Shown: positions 2,135-63,491, counted from the stretch's first letter. The stretch is 64,000 nt of DNA from IMGVR_UViG_3300023049_000005:62001-126000, one strand, 5' to 3'. Numbers and translations: made by a program. The notes: generated from the sequence alone by a model not told the origin.

Positions 2135-2440
2135 ATGGAATTAGATTTTGATAAACCTATATTTGTGTACTATACATCTGATATAAATGTTGGTATAGAT
2201 GCGTGTAAAAAAATGGCAGATGCAGGAATGCAAGTTATACTTGTTCAATTATCTAGTAATTCTTATACCGATGGGTTAGATTGTGTGTACGGTGGGAAGT
2301 ATCATAATAGAGAAAGGGATATACATAAAATAGAACAAGCCATTCTTTTGGGTAAAGATATGGATATTACTAAAAAACTAAAGGAATTGAAAAAGGTTTT
2401 AAATAGGAATATGTTGATCGAAAATATTTTAGAAGAATAA
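2135..2440 (+). CDS. hypothetical protein, C-terminal RxxxIxxIL motif family
   Basis: ends RNMLIENILEE. Confidence 0.7.
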   Translation: MELDFDKPIFVYYTSDINVGIDACKKMADAGMQVILVQLSSNSYTDGLDCVYGGKYHNRERDIHKIEQAILLGKDMDITKKLKELKKVLNRNMLIENILEE

Positions 2441-2442
2441 TT

Positions 2443-2973
2443 ATGGAATATTTACAATACATAGGAAATATTATACTTGGGATAACCATAGCTACGATTT
2501 ATGTTATGTGTATATATATAAGAAAACTCAAAGTAGATAAAAGGGAATTAAAAAAATCAGTGAACATAGATATGGATGAGTATGAGGGATTGATTATTAA
2601 GTATGAAAAGTTAAAAGAAGACTATTCTGATCTCATTAAAGAGAGAGATAAACTAAAAGTTTATATCGGAGTAGTGAACGAAAAAGAATTCGGAATATTA
2701 AGTCACACATTGGTTAGAACCCACGAAGACGAAACAGAAAAAAAGGTTCATTTCGATTTTGAATTTAAAGTAGTAAAACGAGGACAGGACAAAGTTAAAA
2801 TTGAAATTACTGATTATAAATCAAGCTCTGAGGATAAAAGGGGGTCTTTATTTAAAAGGTGTCAGAGTATAGTTAATGGTTGGTATGATATAAATGATCC
2901 TGAAATAACATGGATAGAACCCGATAAAACAACACAAAGAGATTTTAGAATTGATAATATTTTATCAGAATAA
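2443..2973 (+). CDS. membrane-anchored coiled-coil protein, C-terminal motif family
   Basis: N-terminal TM helix; ends RDFRIDNILSE. Confidence 0.7.
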   Translation: MEYLQYIGNIILGITIATIYVMCIYIRKLKVDKRELKKSVNIDMDEYEGLIIKYEKLKEDYSDLIKERDKLKVYIGVVNEKEFGILSHTLVRTHEDETEKKVHFDFEFKVVKRGQDKVKIEITDYKSSSEDKRGSLFKRCQSIVNGWYDINDPEITWIEPDKTTQRDFRIDNILSE

Positions 2974-2990
2974 ATTATTATATTTGTAGG

Positions 2991-3293
2991 ATGGTAACTA
3001 AAAAGAAAAAATTTTACTTAGGGGAAGTTAAATTACCTGTAACAAAGTGTAAGAAACCTTCGTTCAGTGATCATAGAGGTAGGACTTGGGATACAGGTTC
3101 TATTTTCATCGATGGTGAAAAAGTGGATGCGCATTTAGATACTACTTGGGGGGAATATATTTATTTCCAATATGATGAAAAAAATCTATGGCACAAAGTA
3201 AAAATGACATCTAATTATATAGATGACTTAAAGGGGAATAAATGGGATGTGAATCCTGTGGATACAATTAAATCACAGATTACTACCAAATAA
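2991..3293 (+). CDS. hypothetical protein
   Basis: ORF with TATATTTG 4 nt upstream. Confidence 0.6.
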   Translation: MVTKKKKFYLGEVKLPVTKCKKPSFSDHRGRTWDTGSIFIDGEKVDAHLDTTWGEYIYFQYDEKNLWHKVKMTSNYIDDLKGNKWDVNPVDTIKSQITTK

Positions 3294-3340
3294 AATAGTC
3301 TTTTTTAAAACAATACTATAAAGAAAATATATAACGTTGA

Positions 3341-4990
3341 ATGAAATTATTAGATAAAGACCTCCAAGATTATAAGCTTCGTGACCTCCAAGAAGAGTGT
3401 TTAGATTTTATGTTCGATACACTGAACCATGATGAAACAAAAAAATTCTTTCTGTTAGACCTACCTACGGGTACGGGTAAATCAATATTAGCATTAAAGT
3501 TTATCCAACAATATTTAAAAATGGATAGTGATTCTAGATTTGATTTATTAACAGAATCTAAGATATTACAAAACCAATACGCAGAGGAATTTAATTCTAT
3601 TTCCAATCTTTGGGGAAGGAATACCTACCAATGTTCACAATTCAATTGTTCTTGTGAAGAAGGGAAAGAATTTCAGGTGATTTCTAAAAGCAAATGCGAG
3701 AATTGTCCATATGATAATTCGAGAGAAGCTTTTATGAGTGGTAGGATATCATTGACTAATTTTCATATGTTTACATTGATGTCAATGAATAATCTTTTGG
3801 ATAGAAGAGAAAGTAATATTCTTATAGTAGATGAAGCACACCAACTCGAAACGGTTGTGTCAGACTTCATTTCAGTAACTATTTCACATAATATATTAAA
3901 CGGTGTTTTCGAAGATCCTGATAAGATCCTTAATAGTATGAAAGATTTAGTTACGATAGACGACTTTATAGAATATTGTAAAAATGTTCTATTGAGAAAG
4001 GTTCAGACTAAAATGGGGCAATTGGAATTAAGTCTTAAAAAATCAGACAAAAGAGTATTACAAAGAGAACTTAACATTAATGAGATACTAGGAGAAGACG
4101 GCAACCAAGAAGTCGAAACAAGTAAGACTATCAATAAACTCAGATCTATTGAATCTAAATTATCTAACCTTATAGAAGAATATAACGACAACGGAGATAA
4201 TTGGGTATTACAAACTGAATATGATGAAAAGAATAGAAGGAAGATAGTTATCCAACCTATATGGGCATATCCATTCTTCGATAAATATATTTGGAAGAAG
4301 TATGATAAGGTTATCTTAATGAGTGGTACTATACTTGATAAAAAAATGTTTTGTTATATAAATGGTATCAATGAAAATTTTGCAGCGTATTATAGGATCA
4401 ATTCGCCCTTTCTAGTAAAAAACAGACCTATATATTATATGCCAATTGGTAAAATGACATATAAAGAAAAACAAGATACTTTTAAGAAATATGTACCTGT
4501 CTTGAAAAAAATACTAAGTAAGTATAAAAACAAGAAGGGTATCATACATACAGTTACGTTCGAAATACAAAATTGGGTAGTTGATGCGCTGAAATCACCA
4601 AGGCTTCTACCACATGATTCTTCACAGAAATCTAAGAAATATGCTTTGAAGCAACACTATACATCTAACCAAGCAACAGTATTAGTAAGTCCAAGTATGT
4701 CAACGGGTATTGATTTAAAGGATTCGAGAGCTAGATTTCAAGTATGTATGAAAGTACCATACCCATCATTAGCAGACTTCAAGAATAAGAAGAGAAATGA
4801 AACAAATCCCAATTGGTATCAATGGCAAACCATATGTAAATTTATTCAAATGTATGGTAGAGCGGTTAGAAACGAAAATGATAAATCAGATTTTATCATA
4901 TTGGATCAGTCATTTTCTAATATATTATCTAGGGGATCACATTTTATCCCGCAATGGATACAAGATGCAATAAAAACAGTTAAACTATGA
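3341..4990 (+). CDS. DinG/XPD-family SF2 helicase
   Basis: PTGTGKS Walker A, DEAH, Cys cluster (Fe-S-like), SGT, GID, QMYGRAVR. Confidence 0.9.
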   Translation: MKLLDKDLQDYKLRDLQEECLDFMFDTLNHDETKKFFLLDLPTGTGKSILALKFIQQYLKMDSDSRFDLLTESKILQNQYAEEFNSISNLWGRNTYQCSQFNCSCEEGKEFQVISKSKCENCPYDNSREAFMSGRISLTNFHMFTLMSMNNLLDRRESNILIVDEAHQLETVVSDFISVTISHNILNGVFEDPDKILNSMKDLVTIDDFIEYCKNVLLRKVQTKMGQLELSLKKSDKRVLQRELNINEILGEDGNQEVETSKTINKLRSIESKLSNLIEEYNDNGDNWVLQTEYDEKNRRKIVIQPIWAYPFFDKYIWKKYDKVILMSGTILDKKMFCYINGINENFAAYYRINSPFLVKNRPIYYMPIGKMTYKEKQDTFKKYVPVLKKILSKYKNKKGIIHTVTFEIQNWVVDALKSPRLLPHDSSQKSKKYALKQHYTSNQATVLVSPSMSTGIDLKDSRARFQVCMKVPYPSLADFKNKKRNETNPNWYQWQTICKFIQMYGRAVRNENDKSDFIILDQSFSNILSRGSHFIPQWIQDAIKTVKL

Positions 4991-5258
4991 GCGAGAGCGA
5001 AGTAACAAACTTATTATCAAAATATAATCAAATACAGATGTTAGTATGGTGGGTGAACCGATATACTAAGAATAAAGCTGCATCTAATTTCGATGGTAGA
5101 TCAGGTGAATTTATAATAAAAGTTTACGAAGATGCTCAATCAACAAAAGCAAAAACAATATATAAGATAGAGAACATGTGGGTTAAAGCAGAAAGTATTG
5201 TATTAAAAGAGATGCGAGATATAACCCAACAGTTACTCATAATAAAAGAACAGAATTC

Positions 5259-5729
5259 ATGAACATTTTAAAGTTTTTCAGGTGGCAAGGATTTAAGAAA
5301 GTTCCTAAGAAATACTTTACACAAGAATCGTTCGCTTATAGTGTTGAACACAGGGAATGTTGGAGTGAATATAACGGACTTCGAGAAGATCTTAGTAAAA
5401 TTTGGTTCGAAATAAAAGAAGTTAGTAAACGTGAAGCAGAAGGATATAGGAGAACAGCAAGACTCTTGTTTGATCCTGTTAGGCACAATTGTCTTAGTTT
5501 ACAACTAAACGAAAAGGAAATAGTATATATATTCTGTAATAATCAAATGTCATATTCTATATTAATGATAAATAACGAAGATGGGATTTTCACAAGGGCG
5601 TATGAATTTATGTTAGAAGATCACGGAACAGAAAACTCATTTAACAAAAATTTAAAATCTGTAATTGGTACAACAAGATACAGAGATTATGTATTAACTC
5701 AAATTTTTAAAAAAGAAGAAAAGGTATGA
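5259..5729 (+). CDS. hypothetical protein, C-terminal motif family
   Basis: RDYVLTQIF near C-terminus. Confidence 0.6.
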   Translation: MNILKFFRWQGFKKVPKKYFTQESFAYSVEHRECWSEYNGLREDLSKIWFEIKEVSKREAEGYRRTARLLFDPVRHNCLSLQLNEKEIVYIFCNNQMSYSILMINNEDGIFTRAYEFMLEDHGTENSFNKNLKSVIGTTRYRDYVLTQIFKKEEKV

Positions 5730-7663: not shown

Positions 7664-9430
7664 ATGTCAGAATTATCAAATATATATGATCCAAATACGT
7701 TTATAAAAGAAGTTAGAGATAATCGTTATATACAGATCCAAGATGTGTATGGTGAGGTGGATTTTACTATTGATTACCTTTATTTTTCTTCTGCTATACC
7801 AAACGGTAGATTTTTAACAGTAATTAAAACAGATGAAACTTCTATAAAATTACAATTCACTTCAAGTTCAAAAACAATAACAGGGCTTAATAAACTATTA
7901 GACTTAATAGGAAAGCTCAAAAAGGGTACATATAATCCTACTCCTACGACATCTACAACCGAAACACAAGTTCTTGATTACTCTACTATGTACTCTAGTA
8001 GTAACTTCATAAAAGAGATAGCCCAAGTCAAGTATATCCAAATACAAGATAGATTAGCATCAGAAGTAGTACATTCTATTGATTTTAGTAATGTAACAAC
8101 TACTTTAACACAAGGCAGGTTTGTTTTTATATATCAGACTAATGTAGATCTGATAACATTACAGTTTATATCGAACTCAGAAGCAATCACAGCACATAAC
8201 ATATTAAGGGAAACAATAGATCAGCTAAAAGATGGCACTTATGATAAAGTAAGCTCAACTACTATACACGAACCCACACCATTAGACTACTCTACTATGT
8301 ATTCTAGTAGTAACTTCATAAAAGAAGTATTCCAAGATAGGTATATCCAAATACAAGATAGATTAGCATCAGAAGTAGTACATTCTATTGATTATAATAT
8401 TGTTACTAGTACTTTATTACAAGGTAGGTTTGTAATAGTACAACAAACGAATATGGATTCTATATCATTACAGTTTATATCAAATTCAGAAGCAATTGCT
8501 GCACAAAACTTATTAAGGGAAACAATAGATCAACTAAAGGATGATACATATAGTAAAACTATCAGTGGGGCTACAACCGATACCATATCATTAGACTACT
8601 CCTCTATGTATCATAGTAGTAACTTTATAAAAGAAGTATTCCAAAACCAATATATTCAAATACAAGATAGGTTAGCAGACCAAGTAGTACATTCTATCGA
8701 TTTTAATAATATAACAACCACTTTAACACAAGGTAGATTTGTGTTCATATATCAAACTAATGTAGATCTGATAACATTACAGTTTATATCTAATTCTGAA
8801 TCTATTACTGCTCATACTATATTAAGAGAAACAATAGATCAACTAAAGGACAATACGTATAATAAAACTTCTACTATAATTGGTGGTGTTTTATATGACC
8901 CTAATACTTTTATCAATCAAATAGAATTCGAAGACTATTCTGTACAGTTAAGTGATATAAAAGGTAACATAACAGATTCTATTGTAGCAAGACAAGTAAC
9001 TACTGTGTTTACTAGTGAGAATTTTGTTAAAGTTAAATTTGAAGCAAGTGATGAATTAAAGAGTTATCAATTTGAAACGAGTTCTAAAGCAATAGAAGGG
9101 GCTGAGAAACTTAGAATAGCTATTAAAACAATCACTGATAAATTATCATCAGAGGGTGATGGAAGTGGGGTACAAAGTTACAGCGAAGATTTCAATTCGA
9201 ATATATGGAAATTAGATCCTCCTGTAGATTTCTCTATGAGTTCTTTTAATTTAGATTATTATGAATTAGTATGTCCTGATGGATCTAATACTTGTGCCGA
9301 TGCAGATATTGTGAAACAAAGGTGTAGGGGCTTAGTAGAGATAATAGGGAACGAAGATACTGACGTATTATCTTATATTAATATTTACTTCAATCAAACA
9401 GTTAAAGGTAGAGCAATATTAATCGGATAA
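7664..9430 (+). CDS. late repeat-containing protein, possibly a virion protein
   Basis: about five 103-aa repeats; AATATATA motif 4 nt upstream. Confidence 0.7.
   Translation: MSELSNIYDPNTFIKEVRDNRYIQIQDVYGEVDFTIDYLYFSSAIPNGRFLTVIKTDETSIKLQFTSSSKTITGLNKLLDLIGKLKKGTYNPTPTTSTTETQVLDYSTMYSSSNFIKEIAQVKYIQIQDRLASEVVHSIDFSNVTTTLTQGRFVFIYQTNVDLITLQFISNSEAITAHNILRETIDQLKDGTYDKVSSTTIHEPTPLDYSTMYSSSNFIKEVFQDRYIQIQDRLASEVVHSIDYNIVTSTLLQGRFVIVQQTNMDSISLQFISNSEAIAAQNLLRETIDQLKDDTYSKTISGATTDTISLDYSSMYHSSNFIKEVFQNQYIQIQDRLADQVVHSIDFNNITTTLTQGRFVFIYQTNVDLITLQFISNSESITAHTILRETIDQLKDNTYNKTSTIIGGVLYDPNTFINQIEFEDYSVQLSDIKGNITDSIVARQVTTVFTSENFVKVKFEASDELKSYQFETSSKAIEGAEKLRIAIKTITDKLSSEGDGSGVQSYSEDFNSNIWKLDPPVDFSMSSFNLDYYELVCPDGSNTCADADIVKQRCRGLVEIIGNEDTDVLSYINIYFNQTVKGRAILIG
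7973..8899 (+). repeat. three tandem 309-bp intragenic repeats
   Basis: LDYS.MY.SSNFIKE units start at 7973, 8282 and 8591. Confidence 0.85.
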
Positions 9431-9754
9431 TAGTTCATCTATCAATGCATCCCTTTTAATCTTAACGGGTAAACTATTTACTTTTTTACAAAATCTATCA
9501 TATGTATCCATATCATAATACCCTGATTTATAATAGTTCATATCTCTTTTACTTAACCAACCATATTTATTTCTTATATCGTTGAATTCATCATGATGGA
9601 TAGAGTTAACAATAGTATATAAAAGCCTTAGCAAATCAATATGTTTATTGATCAATTCATCATTGGAAGTATTATATTTCTCGGCTTGTCTAATATAAGC
9701 CTTTATTGATCTTCTGTATTTATTCCAAAGTTTTCTTTTCTCTTGTCTGTTCAT
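9419..9754 (-). CDS. hypothetical protein, C-terminal motif family
   Basis: ends RDALIDELLSD; TATATTTG 5 nt upstream. Confidence 0.7.
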   Translation of the reverse strand: MNRQEKRKLWNKYRRSIKAYIRQAEKYNTSNDELINKHIDLLRLLYTIVNSIHHDEFNDIRNKYGWLSKRDMNYYKSGYYDMDTYDRFCKKVNSLPVKIKRDALIDELLSD

Positions 9755-9768
9755 AAAGACAAATATAA

Positions 9769-10503
9769 CTATTTTTTTGCTTTAATAATAGTATCGATAA
9801 ACGAATCTTTCATTTCCTCTCTTTTCTTTATGATCCTAAAGTCAAGGAATATATAAAACAGTAATAGTAATACTATCATAAAATAAGCAATTAAGTATGT
9901 TTTAAAATAAATATTCTGTGTTTGTATCTCCTCTTCTATTATAACAACTTGTTTATTGATATTGGATTCTATTTGGTTTAGTAATAAATCAATGTTTTCC
10001 ACAATAGTTATATTAACATACGGTGAACCTATAATATATTGATTAGTATATCCGTCATACTCTTTTAAGTGTAGTATATTAGTTAGGTGAATTTCCTTTC
10101 TTTTTAATAGATAATTAATGTTTTTAAGAATACTTCGATCTAAGCCCTTTGATATTTCAAAATCTTTTAGTAGGGATTTCCTGTACTTAGATACAACATA
10201 TCTATAATTTGAGACTAATAATCTTTTGTTATTATATAACCCACCATCTCCGTTAGTATCATTATATAATATAGTTTGTTCTTTGGTTAAAAATAAAATA
10301 GATCTACTTTTAATTTCACTCATTTCACTATTAAGCCTGATTATTTCTTTTTGTTGAGCCTCAATTTGATTAACACTTCTATCATATATCGTATTCAACA
10401 CTAAGGTTGACGTAGAAAATACTACTAATAATATAGCTATTTTAACACTTAAAAGGTTCTTTACCCTAAGGTAATTCCTTATCTTTTTTATCCATTTTAT
10501 CAT
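9769..10503 (-). CDS. two-TM membrane protein with a helical extracytoplasmic domain
   Basis: hydrophobic helices near both ends flanking a helical region. Confidence 0.6.
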   Translation of the reverse strand: MIKWIKKIRNYLRVKNLLSVKIAILLVVFSTSTLVLNTIYDRSVNQIEAQQKEIIRLNSEMSEIKSRSILFLTKEQTILYNDTNGDGGLYNNKRLLVSNYRYVVSKYRKSLLKDFEISKGLDRSILKNINYLLKRKEIHLTNILHLKEYDGYTNQYIIGSPYVNITIVENIDLLLNQIESNINKQVVIIEEEIQTQNIYFKTYLIAYFMIVLLLLFYIFLDFRIIKKREEMKDSFIDTIIKAKK

Positions 10504-10656: not shown

Positions 10657-10689
10657 GATTTTTATGTCTAAAAATTAAACCAAATGATT

Positions 10690-10723
10690 AAAACCTCTAC
10701 TTGAATAAAGTAGAGGTTTTTTT
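10690..10723 (+). terminator. attenuator terminator upstream of the tRNA-His pair
   Basis: AAAACCTCTACTT-GAATA-AAGTAGAGGTTTTTTT. Confidence 0.85.
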
Positions 10724-10730
10724 GTTATAT

Positions 10731-10803
10731 GGTGTTCGTAGCTCAGGGGAAGAGCGTCTGTTTGTGACACAGAAGGTCGGGATCTCGGAATTCCTCGAAC
10801 ACC
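10731..10803 (+). tRNA. tRNA-His(GTG) with atypical T-arm
   Basis: G-1:C73, stem TCTGT/ACAGA, GTG at 10764-66; T-loop CTCGGAA. Confidence 0.75.
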
Positions 10804-10813
10804 CAAAATATAT

Positions 10814-10906
10814 GGTGATTGTAGCTGAATGGTATGTAGTATCTGTAAGAGAACAAGCACTTGGTTGTGACCCAAGAGGATGTCGGTTCGAGTCCGATCT
10901 TTCACC
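10814..10906 (+). tRNA. tRNA-His(GTG) with ~20-nt D-loop insertion
   Basis: G-1:C73, stem CTTGG/CCAAG, GTG at 10867-69, canonical TTCGAGT T-loop. Confidence 0.75.
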
Positions 10907-10923
10907 CAAAATATAAATGAAAA

Positions 10924-11139
10924 ATGGAATATTGTTATATATGCTTTAATGGAACAGAAGAAGAAATGGTGTGTGATACATGTGAAGAACATTATTGCGA
11001 AGATTGTTCGTATATCTTTTCATTACACTACCAATTTCAAAGAAGTAGGTGCTATGAGTGTGCTGATCAGAGTAGAGAATATCCATTGGATAAAGCTGAA
11101 ATAAGAGAAAGAAAAATTAATATGTTATTAGAAGTATGA
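10924..11139 (+). CDS. small Cys-rich zinc-finger protein, C-terminal motif family
   Basis: four CxxC pairs; ends RERKINMLLEV; its stop overlaps the ATG of leader 2 (ATGA). Confidence 0.75.
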   Translation: MEYCYICFNGTEEEMVCDTCEEHYCEDCSYIFSLHYQFQRSRCYECADQSREYPLDKAEIRERKINMLLEV

Positions 11140-18185: not shown

Positions 18186-19289
18186 TTAAAAGTCTAGTTC
18201 ATCGAAGTCGTCGTCACCGACAGTTACTTCATCATCATCAAAACTTTCTAATTCATCTGAATCACCACCATCATCCACATCATCAAAAGAGAACTCTTCG
18301 GGTTTTGTAGAGTCGTTAGAACTTGAACTACTAAAAGTTTTAGAAGATGCTTTTCCTGTTAAGAAATCGATAGCTTCTGATACTTTCTTTTGCATTTCTT
18401 CGTTCCATGCTTTACCTGCGAAAGATTCTAAATCAATATCTCTTGAAAGTAACATGTTAACGATCTTTTCTTGGTGTTCTTTCTTGAACTTACCATCTTC
18501 CATAGGAACTCTGATGAATTTATATGATCCATCTTCTTCCTTAGCGATTGGAATAGTTGTTGTTTCATCATAGAATCTACTCTTAGTGTAATCAGGAGCA
18601 GTAACTTCTTTGCCGTCTTGATTAGTGAAAGTATTCTCTTTGGCTAAAAGAACAAAGTCTTTGCCTGTTTTTGGAGAAAATACATCACATGGTACACCTG
18701 TTGCTTCACCTTCTTTCTCACTTACGATAATGTCTTTGATTTGCTTTCCGTAAGAGAAAACCATGATTTTACCAACTAATTCAGGTTGTTGCTCATCTTC
18801 CAATATTAATACGTAAGAAAAATATTTCTTTTGGTATTTAATCTGATTAGCTTTCTCTTTCAAGATTGCGTTATCTGATTTACTTAATTGAAAGTAAGTT
18901 GTCGCCAAAGGACCGTACTTATCAGTAGAGTGTGGCTTCATTGTTTTAGGGTTGATGTTCGTTGGATCATCATAATACCCTCTTACATGAGACATTGCCT
19001 CGTTTTGGATATTTAGGTAGTGAGTCACTTTCTCAAAGTGAGCAGGACCTGATGCTACTTCCATATCCTCATTGTACTTATCACCCGCATATGCTTTCAT
19101 ATACTCGTGGTTGTTTGTGAAGTTAGGTAGGAAACGCAATTTGGCTCTATAGCCCCTTGCTTTGTTTTCTGAACTAACTTTTTCTAGGTCTACTCTATAT
19201 AGACCATCTTGTCCCCTTTCGGTACTTTTCTCCTCAAAGGACGTTTTTTTGCTTAATTTTTCGTCATCGAATAAATCTTCTGAATACAT
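18186..19289 (-). CDS. T4 gp32-like single-stranded DNA-binding protein
   Basis: LRFLPN, Y.LILED...PE.VGKI.VF.YG..I, G.DF.L, acidic tail ending in F. Confidence 0.88.
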   Translation of the reverse strand: MYSEDLFDDEKLSKKTSFEEKSTERGQDGLYRVDLEKVSSENKARGYRAKLRFLPNFTNNHEYMKAYAGDKYNEDMEVASGPAHFEKVTHYLNIQNEAMSHVRGYYDDPTNINPKTMKPHSTDKYGPLATTYFQLSKSDNAILKEKANQIKYQKKYFSYVLILEDEQQPELVGKIMVFSYGKQIKDIIVSEKEGEATGVPCDVFSPKTGKDFVLLAKENTFTNQDGKEVTAPDYTKSRFYDETTTIPIAKEEDGSYKFIRVPMEDGKFKKEHQEKIVNMLLSRDIDLESFAGKAWNEEMQKKVSEAIDFLTGKASSKTFSSSSSNDSTKPEEFSFDDVDDGGDSDELESFDDDEVTVGDDDFDELDF

Positions 19290-27769: not shown

Positions 27770-28291
27770 ATGAGCATATTTCCCGATAGAAAAGATCTAG
27801 GTAAAATACAAGAAGTAGGATACCAAAGCGACCTTGTAGAACAGCTACATGATGCTGTTAAGAACATAGATTATGATAATCTAAACGATGAACCTAATTT
27901 AAAAATAAACGAAGTTGAGAAATCTAAAACGTTCGTGTGGACAAGAGTTTATTTAAAGGAAGATAAAGAAAATATCAAAAAGGGGGATAAAGTATTCTTA
28001 AAATATATTCCAACAAATGAGGAAATCGAAATGATATTTGGCGCATATGAAAAATTAGGACTTAATAAAAACTTTGATGATGAAGTAACTAACTATATCT
28101 CTGATGACGATAAGAAAATACTTTGTTGTATGATCGACCAAAATAGACTTAATAATGATTCAGATGATATACCTAATTTAAGAACGTTTTTTAGGAATTC
28201 AAGATACTATGAAGAAAATCTATTCTTTAAAAGAGATCTAGAAGTTTGGGTAAATGGTGAGCAATTAGAATACGCTTCAATTAGTTTTTAA
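27770..28291 (+). CDS. hypothetical protein
   Basis: ORF with AATATATA upstream. Confidence 0.6.
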   Translation: MSIFPDRKDLGKIQEVGYQSDLVEQLHDAVKNIDYDNLNDEPNLKINEVEKSKTFVWTRVYLKEDKENIKKGDKVFLKYIPTNEEIEMIFGAYEKLGLNKNFDDEVTNYISDDDKKILCCMIDQNRLNNDSDDIPNLRTFFRNSRYYEENLFFKRDLEVWVNGEQLEYASISF

Positions 28292-28927
28292 TACACTATC
28301 GATAAAATCGTCTCTTTTTTTTGGATCTTTATTGTAAATACTTTTCAATATTTCCGATACTCCTTCTTCTATTTCTATTATAGAATTACCGATATCTTTA
28401 TATCTAGTTAATTTCTCATGACTTTTAGGATCTGTTATCTCGCTGTTTAAGTCATTTATGATATTAATTACCTGCGTACTAAGACTATTATACACAATTC
28501 TATCTTCTTTGTCTAAATATTTTGCACATTCATAAGTATATTCTTTTATCAAATCCATATATGCTTTAGTTATCCAAATGAAATAGCACAATTTAACAGT
28601 TTTCACGTACATCAGGATATCATAATGTATTTTACTAATAGGAGTTAATATGATTCTCAATAGTATATCTACCTTTTTGTCACGATGATATAAGTTATTT
28701 CCATAAACATCGTCTTTTATATCATAATAGATAGTAATTCCGTGTGAAATTAAAACGAAAAAAGCACCACATATAAGTAAAGTAATTCCTATTTTTGAAT
28801 GTACGGGGATTATAATAAACGAAAACAGAAATAAAAAAGTAACAAAGAACCTTATATAAAATAAACATCTGAGAGCAGAGGTAATAAATAATGAGATTCT
28901 ATTTGATGTTGTTATAGTTCTATACAT
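28277..28927 (-). CDS. membrane protein, C-terminal motif family
   Basis: two N-terminal TM helices; ends RDDFIDSVLKTN. Confidence 0.65.
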   Translation of the reverse strand: MYRTITTSNRISLFITSALRCLFYIRFFVTFLFLFSFIIIPVHSKIGITLLICGAFFVLISHGITIYYDIKDDVYGNNLYHRDKKVDILLRIILTPISKIHYDILMYVKTVKLCYFIWITKAYMDLIKEYTYECAKYLDKEDRIVYNSLSTQVINIINDLNSEITDPKSHEKLTRYKDIGNSIIEIEEGVSEILKSIYNKDPKKRDDFIDSVLKTN

Positions 28928-35170: not shown

Positions 35171-35545
35171 CTAAGGTAAATATTCTTTAGCATATCCTAA
35201 ATCAATAAGTTCTTGGTTCAAATAAATTTGTTCTCCTGTTTCTTCATTGATATAATAAATCTTAGCAAGGTATCTACCATACTTACCTGTTCTATCTTTA
35301 ATAGATTGTATAATAACATTTTTTTCAAGGATTTTAGATCTGACATAATCTCTCGATATTCGACCCTGTTCTAATTCTTCACCACGCATTTCAGGTGTAT
35401 CTATTCCATATAACCTCAACGCTACTCCTTTTCCTTCAAGTCCGTTTTGTTTTATTCCGAACCCTAGGTCGAAATGACATCTAATAGTATCACCATCGTA
35501 GACTGATACTACATATCCTCTATATACATATTCTGTTGTTATCAT
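35171..35545 (-). CDS. thermonuclease (SNase family)
   Basis: VYDGDT, RLYGIDTPE, GKYGRYLA. Confidence 0.92.
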   Translation of the reverse strand: MITTEYVYRGYVVSVYDGDTIRCHFDLGFGIKQNGLEGKGVALRLYGIDTPEMRGEELEQGRISRDYVRSKILEKNVIIQSIKDRTGKYGRYLAKIYYINEETGEQIYLNQELIDLGYAKEYLP

Positions 35546-43533: not shown

Positions 43534-43540
43534 AATGGAG

Positions 43541-43913
43541 TGGAGATGGAGGGAGTCGAACCCTCGTCACAGACACTTTAGTATAATACTTTCTACAAGT
43601 TTAGTTTACATAGTTAGGGTAAACACCTTAGTTAAACTTATTTTTTTAAACTGTTCTAATCAAACCAAAATTCAGTCCTTCTTATAATAACTGCTAAGAA
43701 GTTTGCAGCTTGGAGTTTTGTCGGTTGCTTAGACAGCTAATACAAGTTCTCCGTCTTGTACAGATTCCGTAGAATCTAATGCGTCTAAAACGTCAATCTT
43801 TTCAGATACTACGTTTAATTGTTTATCTACTAATTTATTAATCGGACACTTTAATAGACAATCCGATACTTGCTTACACTATCTGAAAATGACGCTCTAA
43901 TCCAGTCACCCCC
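43541..43913 (-). ncRNA. ssrA: tmRNA
   Basis: 5' GGGGGTGACTGGATT; 3' GACGAGGGTTCGACTCCCTCCATCTCCA; G3.U70 pair; internal tag frame 43812-43729. Confidence 0.9.
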
Positions 43914-45898: not shown

Positions 45899-46426
45899 AT
45901 GGAATTTATACCTGATTACCATTTAGAAGAATGGGATGAAATAGAAGAGAATGTTTTCGAAAAAGAGAATTTGAGAATAGCCGTAATAGAGGATCGAAAT
46001 GTGCTTTATATAAAAGACAAAGGAAACACCTTTAGGGAAATAAAAGATATCACGAATTATTGGGAATATAGAAGTTTGGATATGTTTTTAAATACTGAAA
46101 CAAATGGCGATCAAGATAATTACGAATATCAACATGATTTCTTTATGTATATCAGAGATAATTTCCAACACTATGATTACTTAGTATTTGATAAATCTAA
46201 TAACCAAGTATACGGGCATAATGGTTTATTTGATGTTGATAATAAATGGGCAGACCAAGAAATGAAACAGAAATATAAAGATGGTAAAGTATTTATAGTT
46301 GATGTTTCTTATGATATATTGCCTTTATGTTATGATGAAGGATGGAAAGACATTGATATTATGTCATATAAAGAAGCTGTAGTGGAACATAGAGATAAGA
46401 AGATATCAGAAGTGCTTAATATATAA
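45899..46426 (+). CDS. hypothetical protein, C-terminal motif family
   Basis: ends RDKKISEVLNI. Confidence 0.7.
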   Translation: MEFIPDYHLEEWDEIEENVFEKENLRIAVIEDRNVLYIKDKGNTFREIKDITNYWEYRSLDMFLNTETNGDQDNYEYQHDFFMYIRDNFQHYDYLVFDKSNNQVYGHNGLFDVDNKWADQEMKQKYKDGKVFIVDVSYDILPLCYDEGWKDIDIMSYKEAVVEHRDKKISEVLNI

Positions 46427-46429: not shown

Positions 46430-46771
46430 ATGTTAATAGACAAAGGAGCAAAATTTAAATATTTCTACCGAATCTTGAAAGAGGTTTATAAGATCATTGA
46501 GATCAATTGGGAAATGAAAGAGGAAGATATAGATAAATTAATCAATATCATAAATTCACATTTAACAGTCTATAACGAAAAATATGCTCATGTTAGAATG
46601 AGTGGATTATATGACGAAGATAAAAAATCACTTACTATATTTTTAAGTGATTATGTACCAACCCGTGGAATGAAAAAACTTTTCAAAGACACGATTTATA
46701 TTAAATCAATTCATAGAGACAAATTCATCGACGACTTATTAGGAGAAGATGAAAGTAATTATTCAATTTAA
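46430..46771 (+). CDS. hypothetical protein, C-terminal motif family
   Basis: RDKFIDDLLGED near C-terminus. Confidence 0.7.
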   Translation: MLIDKGAKFKYFYRILKEVYKIIEINWEMKEEDIDKLINIINSHLTVYNEKYAHVRMSGLYDEDKKSLTIFLSDYVPTRGMKKLFKDTIYIKSIHRDKFIDDLLGEDESNYSI

Positions 46772-51946: not shown

Positions 51947-52615
51947 ATGTTATTTAAATATCAACAATTTTTAAAAGAGAATAATAGTCTTAATATTTGG
52001 TATCATGGTACACCCGATGGTAGAGGGATAGTCAAAGATGGATTCTCACAAAATACTAAAAGTGTGGAATATTTAAAAGATATTGAAGGTTATAAAGATA
52101 TTATGAACCAATTAGAACAAGCTAGAATAGATGGTAAAGATAAATACTTTGAGATATTAGATAAGATATCTGATTTCAAAGACAATTTCACTTTTAATAA
52201 ACCTATATTTTTAAGTAATAATTATAGAGTTGCTTCTACGTATGCTACTGAGAAAAGAGCATTTGATTACCAAGAATCTATACCGAAAGTATTTAAAATG
52301 GGTATAAAAAACGAAGGTAAGGTATTAACTATATATGCTCACAATAAACGATTTAGATTTATTGATTCTGATTTTATAAAAAAGGGGTTAATGGACGGTG
52401 GTATAAGTTCAGAAAAAGCTGAAGAAACTATAAGTAAATTCAATTTCTTTTCAAGAAAAGATGGGATATCGATAGATACTATTGGAGCTATTGCTACTTA
52501 TTTAGGATTTGATACAGTAGATGTAGTTGGTGTATTAGATAGTTACCACGGTGGTACTGTAAAATCTACGGTAAGAATGGTATTTGATTCGAAGAATATA
52601 GAGATATTAAACTAA
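51947..52615 (+). CDS. ADP-ribosyltransferase-like protein with CTS-like N-terminus
   Basis: WYHGT...IFLS....VA.TYA...GFD.V...VF pattern; MLFKYQQFLKEN. Confidence 0.6.
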   Translation: MLFKYQQFLKENNSLNIWYHGTPDGRGIVKDGFSQNTKSVEYLKDIEGYKDIMNQLEQARIDGKDKYFEILDKISDFKDNFTFNKPIFLSNNYRVASTYATEKRAFDYQESIPKVFKMGIKNEGKVLTIYAHNKRFRFIDSDFIKKGLMDGGISSEKAEETISKFNFFSRKDGISIDTIGAIATYLGFDTVDVVGVLDSYHGGTVKSTVRMVFDSKNIEILN

Positions 52616-53034
52616 TCTCCTAATATTTTATCTATCATATAATCTCTCATAAGATAACTAAAATTTTTATCATTAGATAATGTTTCTAAGGTATCATTAT
52701 ATGATTTCTCTGTAACAGTTAAATTATATTCTTTTACATAGTCTAATCTACGTAATAAAAATCGACGCATTAAATCCTTATCTCTGAAATAAAAAGTAGA
52801 TTGATTTGATGCGTGATCAGAAGGATCTGTTTCTATTCTCGATAATTTATCAACACTTAATTGACTTCCATAATAACAATTTTCTAATTTCAAATTATTA
52901 TTTAACGGAAAATTCAATTCGTATATTTGACCTTGTGCGAATGGGTTGATGATAACAGTAGTATAGCGATATTCTTCTAGTTTCTTAGCTATACTTTTAG
53001 ATTGTTTACTAGTTAGACTAAGACCATTAACCAT
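52612..53034 (-). CDS. hypothetical protein, C-terminal motif family; probably starts at 53164 across an A9 frameshift
   Basis: ends RDYMIDKILGD; removing one A from the run at 53075-83 joins it to the ATG at 53164. Confidence 0.6.
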   Translation of the reverse strand: MVNGLSLTSKQSKSIAKKLEEYRYTTVIINPFAQGQIYELNFPLNNNLKLENCYYGSQLSVDKLSRIETDPSDHASNQSTFYFRDKDLMRRFLLRRLDYVKEYNLTVTEKSYNDTLETLSNDKNFSYLMRDYMIDKILGD

Positions 53035-59816: not shown

Positions 59817-59831
59817 TTTTAATAGATAAGA

Positions 59832-59865
59832 ATAAAAAAAGGAGAAATATATTCTCCTTTTTTTA
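59832..59865 (+). terminator. terminator after the sheath gene
   Basis: AAAAAAAGGAGAA-ATATA-TTCTCCTTTTTTT. Confidence 0.8.
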
Positions 59866-59922
59866 TTGTTTAAACTTTTTTCCTATATTTGATACATATA
59901 TAAAACACCAATATATAGTAAT

Positions 59923-61647
59923 ATGCTATCAAAGGAATTCATAAAAGAGTTCAATTTCAATAATAAGTCAGGTAAGATGTCTAGTTCTAAATATGTATCA
60001 AAGAACTATGCTGCGGATTATGATATTATTATAGGTAATATTAAAGAAGATATCTCATTTAAAGAGAAAGTATATCTAACTGTTAATGATATTAACCATT
60101 CTCCTAATTGTAAGAATCCTAATTGTAATGACAAGGTAAAATTCAGAAATACTACTTTAGGGTATAGAGAGTATTGTTCTAATAAATGTATTGGTTCAGA
60201 TCCTAATATGATCAAAAGAAAAGAACAAAAGTCTTTAGAAAAGTTTGGCACAAAAACACCTGCCGAATCAGAAGTAATCAAACAAAAAATGATCAATACT
60301 AATAATAAATTATATGGTGGTAATTCTCCTATGTCAAATAAAGAAATTCAAGAGAAATCTAAGAAAACTTTAATGGGTAATTGGGGTGTAGAAAACCCTA
60401 ACAGACATAAAGATTTAACAGAAAAAAGAATTAAGAGTTTTAAAAAAAATATAGATCAGTTTAAGGCTTCTTTCAAAGAAACTAGCTTAAAGAAATATGG
60501 TGTGGAACACCATTGGATGGTTAAAGAAATACACGATAAAGGAATTAAAACTACTAATAAGAAAAAACTTCAAAAGGAAGAAACTAAAATTAAAAAGAGG
60601 ATACCAAGTGATTATAAATTACTTGGAATATTCAAAGAAAGTGAATTACATAACAGAACAAGTAGTAGGATGTTATGTAATAAGGGTCATGAATTTGTCA
60701 TAAATAATGATCTTTTATATCATAGGACAGTTAAAAACGATACAGTGATATGTACTGAATGTCATCCTCAAAATAATAGAAGTGTAAGTGGATTAGAATT
60801 ACAACTACTTAATTTCATCGAAGAAAGTTATGAAGGTGAAATCATAACTAATAATAGAACTATTATACCGCCACACGAAGTAGATATTTATCTACCTGAA
60901 ATCAAATTAGCTATTGAATTTAATGGTCTTTTTTGGCATAGTGAGATCAATAAGGACAAGTATTATCACTTCAATAAAACTAATGAAGCTGAGAAAGAAG
61001 GCATACAGATGTTACATATTTGGGAAGACGATTGGCTATTGAAGGATGATATAGTTAAATCTATGTTAAAGAATAAATTCAATAATACTCCTAATAAAGT
61101 ATTTGGTAGAAAATGTAAAATTAAAAAAGTTGGCTCTAAGGAATACAGAGAATTCTTAGATAATAATCATATACAAGGTTATTCTAATTCTACTTACTCG
61201 TATGGTTTGTATTATAACGAAAAATTAGTTAGTCTAATGACCTTTTCTAAACCAAGGAATATGATGGGACATAAAAGTAGAGATAATGTTTATGAGTTAG
61301 CTAGGTTTTGTAATAAGACTAATTACAATATAGTAGGTGGTGCTTCTAAATTATTTAAACACTTTATAAAAGAACATTCTCCTAAAGAAATATATTCTTT
61401 TAGTGATAGGTCATATTCTAATGGTAATCTTTATAAGATATTAGGGTTTGAATATAGTCACAGAAGTAAAATAAATTACCATTGGGTATTAAACAAAGAG
61501 AGAAAGCATAGATATAATTTTGCTAAACATAAACTAGTAGAAAAGGGATACGATCCCAATTTATCAGAAAGGGAAATTATGTATGAACAAGTGGGTGCTT
61601 ATAGAATATGGAATAGTGGTCAAGATAAGTGGGTTTATCACATATAG
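59923..61647 (+). mobile_element. free-standing Hef-like homing endonuclease gene (paralog of 39831..41453)
   Basis: same architecture: YCS.KC, KYGV repeats, EVDIYLP..IEFNGLFWH..HIWEDDW, GNAT-like C-terminus. Confidence 0.75.
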
Positions 61648-61990
61648 TAACCCCTATTCCTAATATCTATGTTAAGTTTAGAAAGAAGTTCTTAGTTCCT
61701 CTTACTAATACTCTTAATATGAACACAAATAGTTCTACTGCGATTACACCATAACAAAATAACCAAATATATTTCCCATAATCAGGATTCATCCCATGAT
61801 CACTGATCAATAGACCGATTACGATTTTAGTTACATAAAGCTCTAATGCGACAAATATTGAAAATGTAGCAATAGCAACAGTTCCGTTGATTATTAATTT
61901 ACATAATGTGAATAAAGTTTTCATAGTTTTTTAGTTTGTTAATACAAATATACTAAAAAATATGATAATACCAAAGAATTTATGACTTTT

Positions 61991-62371
61991 CTATATCAAG
62001 TTATTTATTATTTGATCTCTTTTTATAATCTTCTCTATATCTATTGTAGTATAGAATCCATATCGAGCATTCGATTTATATTTTTGGTAAAAGTCAATAC
62101 TCCACAGTTCACCTAATTCTGAATAAGAATTAAATATACTATATCTATTTATACCACTTAAGGCTGTTTTATCTGACCCTGTGGTTATCTTATAAACACC
62201 ACCTTTAGTTTCTCTTTCTCCAAAATCACCATAATAATACACACCATTATCAACTTCAATAGTAAATTCTAATTTATAATCTCGTGCTAAAGCACTTTTC
62301 GTTATATACTTATCTATATTATTGAAAATGGTAATAATATCCTCTGTTAGTGGTTTTCGTTTAATCTTCAT
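61991..62371 (-). CDS. hypothetical protein, paralog of 62749..63174, C-terminal motif family
   Basis: YGDFG, GINRY, YQKYK shared; ends RDQIINNLI. Confidence 0.7.
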   Translation of the reverse strand: MKIKRKPLTEDIITIFNNIDKYITKSALARDYKLEFTIEVDNGVYYYGDFGERETKGGVYKITTGSDKTALSGINRYSIFNSYSELGELWSIDFYQKYKSNARYGFYTTIDIEKIIKRDQIINNLI

Positions 62372-62759
62372 CTAAAATATTATTAATACTTAATTCTCTA
62401 TTCCTTTGTTTGATCCAACTACCATCACGTGTTACAAAGTAGTGATTGTCTTTATCCTTACCTTTTTCGAAAAAACTTATTATATGTATATCTTCCCATT
62501 CTAATTGATGGAAAATATTATAATGTTTTATATCAGATATATGAGATTGAGAAAATCCAATTCTATCTATATAATGTAAAGTGATATCGTCTACCTGATT
62601 AGTTTGGAAATTCAGAGAAAAACAATCATTAAATCCTTTCATATATCTGAAATTAGAAACATTCCAAAGATTACCTTCTGTGTATATACACATATAATTA
62701 ATCCTATCTGATATAGTGTTCAATATATCTTCGTTTATATTTTCTGTTCTAATGTTCAT
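62361..62759 (-). CDS. hypothetical protein, C-terminal motif family
   Basis: ends RELSINNILDED. Confidence 0.7.
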   Translation of the reverse strand: MNIRTENINEDILNTISDRINYMCIYTEGNLWNVSNFRYMKGFNDCFSLNFQTNQVDDITLHYIDRIGFSQSHISDIKHYNIFHQLEWEDIHIISFFEKGKDKDNHYFVTRDGSWIKQRNRELSINNILDED

Positions 62760-63174
62760 CTAAGATATTATTTATGATATTATCTCTATTTAAAATAGTA
62801 AATATGTTAGTCTGCGTATAAAATTTTATTTTAGGTCTTGTTTTATATTTTTGATACAGCATTATAACTGTATAAGTCTCATCATTAAGTGCGTGACGTA
62901 CTGACAACGTATATCTATTTAAACCCTTAATTGTTTTGGGGTTTATGTTAATGCTTTCGGGTATAGTAGTTACCATAAAAAGGTCACCTTTATTTTCTGA
63001 TAACTTACCATAATCACCATATACATAATCTTTGGTATCCTTTGTATAACCAATATTAATTTTATCTTTAAGTTTAAAGTCACATATACTATAATTGAGG
63101 TAATGATCTCTTACTTTATTATAAAGGTCAATATTTGTAATAATATCTAAGAAGTCTGTTGTTATCTTTTTCAT
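62749..63174 (-). CDS. hypothetical protein, C-terminal motif family
   Basis: ends RDNIINNILDEH. Confidence 0.7.
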   Translation of the reverse strand: MKKITTDFLDIITNIDLYNKVRDHYLNYSICDFKLKDKINIGYTKDTKDYVYGDYGKLSENKGDLFMVTTIPESININPKTIKGLNRYTLSVRHALNDETYTVIMLYQKYKTRPKIKFYTQTNIFTILNRDNIINNILDEH

Positions 63175-63491
63175 GATAGTAAAGAATTTAAAATGAGATC
63201 TCTTTTGATTATTTTTTCTATATCGATATTAAAATCCATATCCCCCATGAGTTTATCGTTAATATCATAAAATTCAATGTGTTTTTGGTCTAATATAATA
63301 CTAATAATGTTATGTATCTTTGTCTCATGGTAAGGGTGTTCATTCATTTTGATTGTTATTTGACAGAACATCCCTTTTTTTGACCAACTAAGCCTAGCAG
63401 AATTTTTTGTGTTTACATTATACCAAAAATATTGAAAATTAGAATCAATCATTTTTATTATAGGTATAGTCAGCTTAATCTTTTCTTTCAT
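63171..63491 (-). CDS. hypothetical protein, C-terminal motif family
   Basis: ends RDLILNSLLS. Confidence 0.7.
   Translation of the reverse strand: MKEKIKLTIPIIKMIDSNFQYFWYNVNTKNSARLSWSKKGMFCQITIKMNEHPYHETKIHNIISIILDQKHIEFYDINDKLMGDMDFNIDIEKIIKRDLILNSLLS

What the first reader, a model, noticed from the sequence alone, without database searches (positions are those of the whole stretch)
2135..63491. A shared C-terminal peptide R[DE]xx[IL]xx[ILV]L on about 13 otherwise unrelated proteins
Seen at or near the C-terminus of ORFs 2135 (RNMLIENIL), 2443 (RDFRIDNIL), 5259 (RDYVLTQIF), 9419 (RDALIDELL), 10924 (RERKINMLL), 28277 (RDDFIDSVL), 45899 (RDKKISEVL), 46430 (RDKFIDDLL), 52612 (RDYMIDKIL), 61991 (RDQIINNLI), 62361 (RELSINNIL), 62749 (RDNIINNIL) and 63171 (RDLILNSLL), and internally in the helicase (RELNINEIL, 4064-90). 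Carriers include soluble, membrane and Zn-finger proteins. The underlying DNA differs, so conservation is at protein level. None carries the N-terminal CTS-like tag, and several follow host-type promoters. Inference: an amphipathic docking helix or sorting/degradation tag read by one hub protein, i.e. a proteome-wide addressing system.
Basis: partly seen in the sequence, partly recalled or inferred. Interest (0 to 1): 0.8.

Follow-up and report, generated by a model that had tools for sequence, protein, structure and literature searches.

The report
Shared end-tag on early phage proteins
About one in seven proteins in this stretch of a huge lake-water phage, and about 94 of 945 proteins in a fully sequenced relative, carry the same 13-residue helix-like peptide next to their C-terminus although they are otherwise unrelated, which points to an undescribed address label or docking tag whose reader is still unknown.

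Summary
There are 13 C-terminal matches against 0.08 expected from shuffles and 0 of 48 in alternative-frame ORFs. Synonymous codons vary as in the rest of the genome and the flanking DNA is unrelated, so the constraint acts on the protein.

The full motif is K(-4)xxxR-[DEN]-x-K/x-[IL]-[ND]-x-[ILV]-[LIF]-x-[DE], followed by 0-7 residues.

The window is part of a 270-kb IMG/VR contig from lake water, belonging to a T4-like-headed "Mahaphage"-type huge phage. The tag is clade-wide:
- 94 of 945 genes in LR745206, falling into 93 BLAST clusters.
- 14 carriers in 100 kb of LR756502.
- 58 of 68 related IMG/VR loci.
- None in LR756501, LR756500, Lak-A1 or Tenacibaculum phage PTm1.

Carriers are small ORFans that lack the late-promoter-like AATATATA box (1/94). 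They almost never also carry the T4-CTS-like N-terminal tag. The DNA polymerase keeps a T4-type clamp-binding tail instead.

Best reading: a portable docking helix linking fast-evolving non-late accessory proteins to one common receptor. The receptor and the consequence are not identified.

The parts
2135..2440 (+). Carrier ORF (101 aa). Tag RNMLIENIL at 2405-2431, followed by EE and the stop. Has tagged orthologues in LR745206 and LR756502.
2443..2973 (+). Carrier ORF (176 aa) with an N-terminal transmembrane segment. Tag RDFRIDNIL at 2938-2964.
4064..4090 (+). Internal tag RELNINEIL inside the XPD/DinG-type helicase (ORF 3341-4990). It is kept in both orthologues within a poorly conserved stretch.
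5259..5729 (+). Carrier ORF (156 aa). Tag RDYVLTQIF at 5682-5708 (weakest match, 6 residues follow).
9419..9754 (-). Carrier ORF (111 aa, helical). Tag RDALIDELL at 9428-9454. The downstream gene is convergent.
9769..10503 (-). Candidate carrier (244 aa) with the K-for-R variant KDSFIDTII at 9784-9810.
10924..11139 (+). Carrier ORF (71 aa, four CxxC pairs) lying inside the tRNA array. Tag RERKINMLL at 11104-11130.
28277..28927 (-). Carrier ORF (216 aa, multi-pass membrane protein). Tag RDDFIDSVL at 28289-28315.
45899..46426 (+). Carrier ORF (175 aa). Tag RDKKISEVL at 46391-46417. The only other homologue found among 5.8 billion proteins (63% identity) keeps the tag.
46430..46771 (+). Carrier ORF (113 aa). 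Tag RDKFIDDLL at 46715-46741, 9 residues follow.
52612..53034 (-). Carrier ORF (140 aa). Tag RDYMIDKIL at 52621-52647. The downstream gene is convergent.
61991..62371 (-). Carrier ORF (126 aa). Tag RDQIINNLI at 61994-62020, the very last residues. Paralogue of 62749.
62361..62759 (-). Carrier ORF (132 aa). Tag RELSINNIL at 62373-62399.
62749..63174 (-). Carrier ORF (141 aa). Tag RDNIINNIL at 62761-62787.
63171..63491 (-). Carrier ORF (106 aa). Tag RDLILNSLL at 63177-63203.

Best explanation
The peptide is a portable short linear motif. It is a roughly 13-residue amphipathic helix, K(-4)xxxR0-[DEN]1-x-K/x3-[IL]4-[ND]5-x-[ILV]7-[LIF]8-x-[DE]10. It places R0, K3/I4 and I7/L8 on one face.

It has been appended, mostly at the C-terminus but also internally or near the N-terminus, to roughly a tenth of the proteome of one clade of huge Bacteroidota-type phages.

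Inferred mechanism: the helix docks into a hydrophobic groove with an acidic rim on one common receptor. That tethers a large, fast-evolving cohort of small, non-late (probably early, host-RNA-polymerase-transcribed) accessory proteins to the same place or machine.

The most likely consequence is collective recruitment or control of these proteins, or of the targets their variable bodies bind: co-localisation, sequestration or hand-over to a protease.

Shown: the motif, its positional bias, protein-level selection, modularity, clade restriction, and its transcription-class bias. Inferred: helix docking and a single receptor. Unknown: the receptor's identity and the outcome.
For: - Enrichment: 13 C-terminal hits against 0.08 expected in the window. 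In LR745206, 94 of 945 genes against about 1 expected from the internal hit rate, and 1 of 614 alternative-frame ORFs.
- Independent test set: LR756502 has 14 C-terminal and 5 internal hits, a 38-fold difference in rate.
- Specificity: anchoring only on [KR][IL]xx[ILV][LIF], R occupies position 0 in 102 of 121 cases. K(-4) is conserved although it was never part of the search pattern.
- Protein level: synonymous codons vary and the flanks are unrelated. Three carriers are followed by convergent genes.
- Modularity: 94 carriers form 93 BLAST clusters. 47 carriers from three genomes form 39 clusters. Paralogues of the capsid protein and of the prohead protease carry the tag, while the true MCP and protease do not.
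- Purifying selection: in orthologue pairs and in the MCP-like family the tag is the best conserved stretch. R0 is one of only two invariant residues in the protease-like family.
- Position independence: the internal copy in the helicase is conserved in two orthologues. Full-strength internal or N-proximal copies are followed by polar linkers.
- Class bias: the late-type AATATATA box lies within 40 nt upstream of 1/94 C-tag genes, 141/780 other genes and 30/71 N-tag genes (P = 9e-7). TAnnTTTG is present upstream of 19% of C-tag genes against 11% of others. Carriers make up 88/642 genes of 200 aa or less against 6/303 longer ones.
- Clade restriction and a lineage shift at position 3 (K in the LR745206 lineage, variable in the window) fit a co-evolving receptor.
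Against: - No receptor was identified and no binding was modelled.
- Helicity rests only on low-confidence single-sequence AlphaFold2 models (pLDDT 54 and 42).
- 'Early' is inferred from promoter-like motifs, not from expression data. Only DNA runs hold this sequence.
- A single receptor for about 100 clients is an assumption. The tags could instead bind one another.
- The hydrophobic spacing (4, 7, 8 plus an acidic residue at 10) equals that of the T4 capsid targeting sequence, so a head-related address is not excluded.
Confidence: 0.55

Rival explanations
1. C-terminal capsid (prohead-core) targeting signal. It would be a C-terminal counterpart of the T4 CTS that loads many small proteins into the giant head for injection.
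For: - The spacing matches the T4 CTS. In T4, residues 4 and 7 target and residues 8 and 10 govern processing (PMC9026906). In the tag these positions are I4, I7, L8 and D/E10.
- T4 gp21 and Alt are processed at their C-termini.
- Conserved tagged families in relatives are paralogues of the MCP and of the prohead protease.
- L8-x-E10 resembles the gp21 cleavage site.
Against: - C-tag genes almost never have the late-type box that precedes all head and tail genes and 42% of N-tagged genes (1/94).
- The same genomes already hold a T4-like N-terminal CTS set, and the two sets hardly overlap.
- Carriers include membrane proteins and helicases with internal copies.
- The residue at +10 is acidic in only about half of the cases.
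- The MCP-like carrier lies in a NADAR-Dam operon without a late box.
Confidence: 0.15
2. Degradation tag. A common degron lets a host or phage AAA+ protease clear early proteins at the switch to late development.
For: - The tag sits next to the C-terminus on non-late proteins.
- The phage carries proteostasis genes: ClpS, a tmRNA and an SPFH/Band 7 lipoprotein.
- Truncated MCP and protease paralogues would be harmful if they persisted into head assembly.
Against: - The tag is followed by 0-7 variable, mostly polar or acidic residues, so a free carboxylate at a fixed distance is not recognised.
- It works as a conserved internal element in long-lived enzymes such as helicases.
- Invariant R0 and K3 are unlike known ClpX, ClpA, Lon or FtsH C-terminal degrons (own knowledge).
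- A pattern search for classical AAA+ Walker A motifs in LR745206 matched only two ORFs, neither of which was characterised.
Confidence: 0.15
3. Homotypic association. The helices bind each other, as BMC encapsulation peptides do, and condense the tagged proteins into one body without a dedicated receptor.
For: - It is a short amphipathic helix at either terminus of unrelated proteins, joined by polar linkers. That matches the definition of encapsulation peptides (PMC4594438), and those peptides drive condensation (abstract of PMC12339742).
- Carriers cluster mildly along the genome (19 adjacent pairs against 9.3 expected).
Against: - Encapsulation peptides show a residue-class pattern without sequence conservation. 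Here R0, K3, I4, I7 and L8 are near invariant, which is typical of a specific heterotypic interface.
- Only three hydrophobic positions is little for a self-associating bundle.
Confidence: 0.08
4. PIP-box-like sliding-clamp binding motif.
For: - The spacing D1-x-x-I4-x-x-I7-L8 equals Qxx[ILM]xx[FY][FY] and the location is C-terminal (own knowledge of PIP boxes).
- Two helicases carry it.
- One conserved carrier is translationally coupled to a Dam-type methylase gene.
Against: - The clade's gp43-type polymerase ends ..SVVMDIFGGFK, like T4 gp43 ..ASLDFLFG, and not in the tag.
- The clamp loader, SSB and both polymerase halves have no tag.
- There is no Q and there are no aromatic residues.
- About 100 ORFan clients, some of them membrane proteins, is implausible for a clamp.
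Confidence: 0.05
5. No shared function. The peptide is a relic of one ancient, hugely expanded gene family or a by-product of how new genes arise, or it is a nucleotide-level signal (terminator, recombination site, ribosome-binding site of the next gene).
For: - Some carriers are tandem paralogues.
- Carriers often sit next to each other.
Against: - After trimming the tag, 93 of 94 clusters are singletons.
- The tag is the best conserved part of diverging orthologues.
- It was gained by MCP and protease paralogues.
- Codons vary synonymously and the flanks are unrelated.
- Carriers followed by convergent genes keep it.
- Alternative-frame ORFs lack it.
Confidence: 0.03
6. Membrane-targeting amphipathic helix like those of MinD or FtsA.
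For: It is a C-terminal amphipathic helix with basic residues.
Against: - Acidic or amide residues occupy positions 1, 5, 9 and 10.
- Only three hydrophobic positions are present.
- Conservation is strictly positional, with an invariant R.
- It is present on proteins that already have transmembrane segments.
Confidence: 0.02

Closest known systems
T4 capsid targeting sequence (CTS) of the internal proteins
   Same: Both are a 10-13-residue terminal peptide shared by otherwise unrelated proteins of a T4-type phage. Both have hydrophobic residues at relative positions 4, 7 and 8 and an acidic residue at 10.
   Different: The CTS is N-terminal, aromatic (Y4, F7) and cleaved by gp21, and it is found on a handful of head proteins. 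This tag is C-terminal or internal, aliphatic, and has an invariant R0 and K3. It sits on about 100 small non-late ORFans and coexists with a genuine CTS-like N-terminal tag on a different protein set.
Encapsulation peptides of bacterial microcompartments (PduP, PduD, EutC, CcmN)
   Same: Both are short amphipathic helices at the N- or C-terminus of unrelated cargo, act as independent modules, and are followed or preceded by hydrophilic linkers or tails (PMC4594438). From my own memory, the PduP N-terminus ..LETLIRTILSE.. looks much like RDFRIDNILSE.
   Different: Encapsulation peptides lack sequence conservation and serve a few enzymes of one pathway beside shell genes. Here the sequence is strongly conserved, the clients are about 10% of a phage proteome, and no BMC shell gene was seen in the window.
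Clamp-binding tails and PIP boxes (T4 gp43, gp33 and gp55 C-termini; Qxx[ILM]xx[FY][FY])
   Same: Both are C-terminal hub-docking peptides with h-x-x-h-h spacing, used by several unrelated proteins.
   Different: The canonical client in this clade keeps a T4-like tail (..MDIFGGFK) and lacks the tag. The tag has no Q and no aromatic residues, and there are far more clients.
C-terminal translocation signals of Dot/Icm (type IVB) effectors, and ssrA-type degrons
   Same: In both, a C-terminal label marks a large, diverse, fast-evolving set of effector-like proteins (Dot/Icm), or marks proteins for one machine (ssrA).
   Different: Those signals are compositional (Dot/Icm) or need the free C-terminal end (ssrA). 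This tag is a defined sequence that also works in internal positions. No secretion system is involved in any obvious way.

Membership tests
T4-type capsid targeting sequence | Located in the first ~10 residues of the precursor | tested here: not met
   The tag ends 0-7 residues before the stop in 93 of the 94 LR745206 carriers and 0-9 residues before it in the 13 window carriers.
T4-type capsid targeting sequence | Hydrophobic residues at positions 4 and 7 for targeting; residues 8 and 10 (acidic) for gp21 processing | tested here: inconclusive
   I4, I7 and L8 are conserved. Position 10 is D or E in about 46% of carriers that have a residue there.
T4-type capsid targeting sequence | Carried by head proteins that are made late | tested here: not met
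   The late-type AATATATA box is present upstream of 1/94 C-tag genes, against 30/71 N-tag genes and all 5 head/tail genes checked. This is an inference from sequence motifs only.
T4-type capsid targeting sequence | The protein is found inside virions | not testable with these tools
   There is no cultured member and no proteome. Only DNA runs hold the sequence.
BMC encapsulation peptide | An amphipathic helix of about 15-20 aa at either terminus, separated from the domain by a linker | tested here: inconclusive
   The tag is helical in two low-confidence models. It is separated by a 6-residue break in 9419 and is continuous with the preceding helix in 52612. N-proximal and internal copies exist.
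BMC encapsulation peptide | Pattern-level conservation only, and association with BMC shell genes | tested here: not met
   R0, K3, I4, I7 and L8 are near invariant. No shell-protein family appeared among the Pfam hits of the window.
PIP-box / clamp-binding motif | Consensus Qxx[ILM]xx[FY][FY], or a T4-like S-L-D-F-L-F tail | tested here: not met
   No Q and no aromatic residues at the corresponding positions.
PIP-box / clamp-binding motif | Present on the replicative polymerase and other clamp clients | tested here: not met
   The polymerase C-terminal half ends ..SVVMDIFGGFK, compared with T4 ..ASLDFLFG. The polymerase, clamp loader and SSB score at or below 5.6 bits.
ssrA-like C-terminal degron | A non-polar extreme C-terminus with a free carboxylate that is recognised | tested here: not met
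   0-7 variable, mostly polar residues follow the tag, and conserved internal copies exist.
Membrane-targeting sequence (MinD/FtsA type) | A basic-hydrophobic helix conserved in composition, not in sequence | tested here: not met
   D/E/N at position 1, N/D at 5, D/E at 9-10, and an invariant R0.

The most novel reading that the evidence does not exclude
The tag is the handle of a clade-specific adaptor system. About a hundred rapidly evolving early proteins each bind a different host or phage target through their variable body, including decoy-like fragments of the phage's own capsid protein and prohead protease. All are plugged by the same helix into one dedicated receptor that sequesters, relocates or destroys what they bring. 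In logic this would be a phage counterpart of F-box or H-box substrate-receptor families, and together with the N-terminal CTS-like tag it would form a two-label addressing code for the proteome of huge phages.
Probability: 0.2. Interest if true: 0.92.

Novelty: new variant of a known kind. Interest (0 to 1): 0.78.

Why it matters
Huge phages carry hundreds of small genes that have no homologues and no known function.

A single conserved peptide shared by about 10% of them gives the first common handle on this dark matter. It defines a cohort (non-late, small, fast-evolving). It predicts one receptor that could be found by a peptide pull-down or a co-folding screen. It would also give a transferable tag for engineering.

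The tag coexists with a separate T4-CTS-like N-terminal tag on a late-expressed set. That suggests these phages sort their proteomes with terminal labels, something not described in any paper found by the literature searches made here.

Tried and rejected
- **Nucleotide-level signal.** Rejected. Codons vary synonymously in line with genome usage. Neither the 30 nt upstream nor the 70 nt downstream is conserved.
- **Ribosome-binding or coupling signal for the next gene.** Rejected. Carriers 9419, 28277 and 52612 are followed by convergent genes.
- **Composition artefact of an AT-rich genome.** Rejected by shuffles, the mirror motif, alternative-frame ORFs and AT-rich negative genomes.
- **Stop-codon recoding creating false C-termini.** TAA, TGA and TAG all terminate well-packed genes.
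- **Hidden paralogy.** Only one clear pair in the window, and 93 clusters from 94 carriers in LR745206.
- **Known domains.** Pfam and PHROGs found nothing significant on the window carriers. Among 20 larger LR745206 carriers, one matched DUF6011.
- **ESM Atlas look-alikes of the tag region.** Uninformative.
- **PDB profile search with the protease-like tagged family.** Only a weak resemblance (E = 0.023) to pseudomurein-binding repeats, taken as chance.
- **AlphaFold2 on two carriers without alignments.** Low confidence, usable only for 'helical'.
- **Import signal for a replication compartment.** Core replication, transcription and metabolic proteins lack the tag.
- **Literature.** No paper found describes the motif.

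Full report
**What the window is.**
- The 64-kb window has about 29% GC.
- It encodes a T4-type head and tail module: a gp20-like portal, a gp21-like protease, a gp23-like capsid protein, a large terminase and a sheath-like protein.
- It also encodes an XPD/DinG-type helicase, a gp32-like SSB, a sigma-70-region-2 protein, ClpS, purine and PRPP enzymes, NUDIX, NADAR and an SPFH lipoprotein.
- RNA genes are eight tRNAs and a tmRNA.
- It is identical to part of IMG/VR contig IMGVR_UViG_3300023049_000005 (270,756 bp). It is held by lake-water metagenome DNA runs.
- The nearest GenBank relatives are the 634-735-kb uncultured huge phages LR745206 and LR756501-4 (capsid protein 48-58% identical). More distant are the Lak megaphages and jumbo phages of Tenacibaculum and Chryseobacterium, all Bacteroidota-associated (PMC7162821).
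- The standard genetic code applies.

Shuffling each protein 2000 times gives 1.3 matches in total and 0.08 C-terminal.
- Mirror and reversed controls give one match each. ORFs in alternative frames give none.
- Synonymous codons at R, I and L positions vary as in the genome at large, and nothing is conserved in the DNA beside the 27 coding bases. Selection therefore acts on the peptide.
- Three carriers are followed by convergent genes, so the motif is not a start signal for a downstream gene.
- One correction is needed. 61991 and 62749 are true paralogues. 63171 and 62361 share only their C-terminal ends with them.

**The full motif.**
- K(-4) was not part of any search pattern, so it is independent support.
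- I also anchored on the distal half only, [KR][IL]xx[ILV][LIF], within the last 16 residues of LR745206 proteins. That gives 121 cases against about 15 expected. In these, R occupies position 0 in 102 of 121 and D/E/N occupies position 1 in 89 of 121.
- On a helix, positions 0, 3, 4, 7 and 8 lie on one face.
- Two single-sequence AlphaFold2 models are poor (pLDDT 54 and 42) but place the tag in a terminal helix.

**It is clade-wide and proteome-wide.**
- I assembled the complete 634,780-bp LR745206 from 13 fetched pieces and scored it with a position matrix built from the 29 instances. 94 of 945 genes carry a C-terminal tag. About one would be expected from the internal hit rate, and 1 of 614 alternative-frame ORFs carries one.
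- As an independent test set, 100 kb of LR756502 gave 14 C-terminal and 5 internal hits.
- Of 68 distinct IMG/VR loci around related capsid genes (54-60% identity), 58 hold at least one tag.
- The sampled 50-100-kb stretches of LR756501, LR756500, Lak-A1 and Tenacibaculum phage PTm1 hold none. LR756504 holds two weak ones.
- The label therefore belongs to one large, uncultivated freshwater and environmental lineage.

**Who carries it.**
- Carriers are small: median 110-113 aa, and 88 of 642 genes of 200 aa or less against 6 of 303 longer ones.
- They have almost no database relatives. Pfam and PHROGs found nothing significant on the window carriers, and among 20 larger LR745206 carriers one matched DUF6011. 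Carrier 45899 has a single homologue among 5.8 billion proteins.
- After the tag is trimmed, the 94 LR745206 carriers form 93 BLAST clusters.
- Where orthologues exist, the tag is the best conserved stretch.
- The tag is modular. Relatives encode a ~250-aa protein homologous to the C-terminal 200 residues of the capsid protein that ends in the tag. They also encode a ~140-aa protein homologous to the N-terminal part of the prohead protease with the tag at residues 30-45. The genuine capsid protein and protease have no tag.
- The internal copy in the window's helicase is conserved in both orthologues inside an otherwise variable stretch.
- LR745206 holds a dozen further full-strength internal or N-proximal copies, each followed by a polar linker.

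**Expression class.**
- A box [AT]AATATATA or TATATATA precedes the capsid, portal, protease, sheath and terminase genes. From my own knowledge it resembles the T4 late promoter TATAAATA.
- In LR745206 this box lies within 40 nt upstream of 1 of 94 C-tag genes, 141 of 780 ordinary genes, and 30 of 71 genes whose products start with a T4-CTS-like peptide (M-x-K-K-[YW]-x-x-F-[IL]-x-E) (Fisher P = 9e-7 and 8e-6).
- The Bacteroidota -7 element TAnnTTTG (own knowledge) is somewhat enriched before C-tag genes: 19% against 11% for ordinary genes and 3% for N-tag genes.
- The two tags are nearly exclusive. One protein carries both where 7.1 would be expected by chance (P = 0.007). None does so in the window.
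- I infer that C-tagged proteins are non-late, probably early products. This rests on motifs only.

**What it is probably not.**
- Not a clamp-binding motif. The clade's gp43-type polymerase ends ..SVVMDIFGGFK, like T4 ..ASLDFLFG. The polymerase, clamp loader and SSB lack the tag.
- Not a classical end-dependent degron. The distance to the end varies from 0 to 7 residues and internal copies are conserved.
- Not a membrane anchor. It has acidic positions and strict positional conservation.
- Probably not the capsid address. A CTS-like N-terminal set with late boxes already exists, and membrane proteins carry the C-tag. This reading keeps some weight, however. The hydrophobic and acidic spacing equals that of the T4 CTS (PMC9026906), and capsid-protein and protease paralogues are tagged.

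**Best explanation.**
- The tag is a portable docking helix read by one common receptor. It tethers a large cohort of fast-evolving, non-late accessory proteins.
- The clade restriction, and the shift at position 3 between the window lineage and the LR745206 lineage, fit a co-evolving and perhaps phage-encoded receptor.
- The outcome (co-localisation, sequestration, hand-over to a protease, or loading into particles) remains open.
- The closest analogues in logic are the T4 CTS and the encapsulation peptides of bacterial microcompartments (PMC4594438). The tag fails the defining features of both families, so I file it as a new variant of the 'terminal address peptide' kind, not as a member of either family.
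- No paper found in the searches describes it.

Noticed in passing
window 13052, 26563, 29388, 45223, 48699, 50303, 51947 (N-termini; also 1231 and 41497, seen by eye only); LR745206 genome-wide: There is a second proteome-wide label, an N-terminal peptide M-x-K-K-[YW]-x-x-F-[IL]-x-E that resembles the T4 capsid targeting sequence. It is found on 7 window proteins by pattern and on 72 of 945 LR745206 proteins, including NUDIX and GNAT-like enzymes. It is 5-fold enriched at N-termini, tied to the late-type box, and nearly exclusive with the C-terminal tag.
   Followed up: partly
window, e.g. 13039, 26550, 45210, 49215(-), 51934, 63678: A promoter-like box [AT]AATATATA[ACT] begins exactly 13 nt before the ATG of many genes, implying leaderless or very short-leader mRNAs. 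The same box lies 20-45 nt upstream of the head and tail genes.
   Followed up: partly
window 43538-43913 (-): A phage-encoded tmRNA (Rfam 59 bits). The ARAGORN tag peptide ends ..GELVLAV.
   Followed up: no
window 10732-10803 and 10815-10906 (+): Rfam finds two tRNA genes that ARAGORN missed, making eight tRNAs in the 10.7-11.8 kb array. They invalidate the antisense ORF 10675-10992.
   Followed up: partly
window 915-1196 (-): A ClpS adaptor homologue (Pfam 1e-17), with a 46%-identical orthologue in LR745206.
   Followed up: no
window 18186-19289 (-) and 33472-35169 (+): The gp32-like SSB and the portal both end in long acidic tails that finish with an aromatic residue (..DDDFDELDF and ..EDVGDFEF). 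Portals of relatives end ..GGEFEF. This may be another shared terminal motif.
   Followed up: no
window 39831-41453 and 59923-61647 (+): Two paralogous DUF7487 proteins, one also with a REase_MTES_1575 domain, sit directly after the capsid gene and the sheath gene. They look like mobile endonuclease insertions.
   Followed up: no
window 35171-35545 (-) versus L030:4818-7589 and other relatives: Between the portal and protease genes the window has a staphylococcal-nuclease homologue. Most relatives have a three-gene minus-strand operon there. Its 634-aa middle product looked RNase II/R-like by eye only (no search was run), and the operon ends with the tagged protease-like protein.
   Followed up: partly
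LR745206 130568-131992 (-) and 232803-234344 (+): The gp43-type DNA polymerase is encoded as two separate ORFs about 100 kb apart: the exonuclease/motif A half and the motif C/C-terminal half.
   Followed up: no
LR745206 83154-83393, 255010-255237, 265897-266055: Three small ORFs picked up by loose polymerase-motif patterns end in a related peptide, [RK]K.KI..[IV][FW].[IL][DE], which looks like a K-for-D variant of the tag.
   Followed up: no
LR745206 77454-80087 (-): The huge phage encodes a TonB-dependent-receptor-like protein (CarboxypepD_reg plus Plug domains).
   Followed up: no
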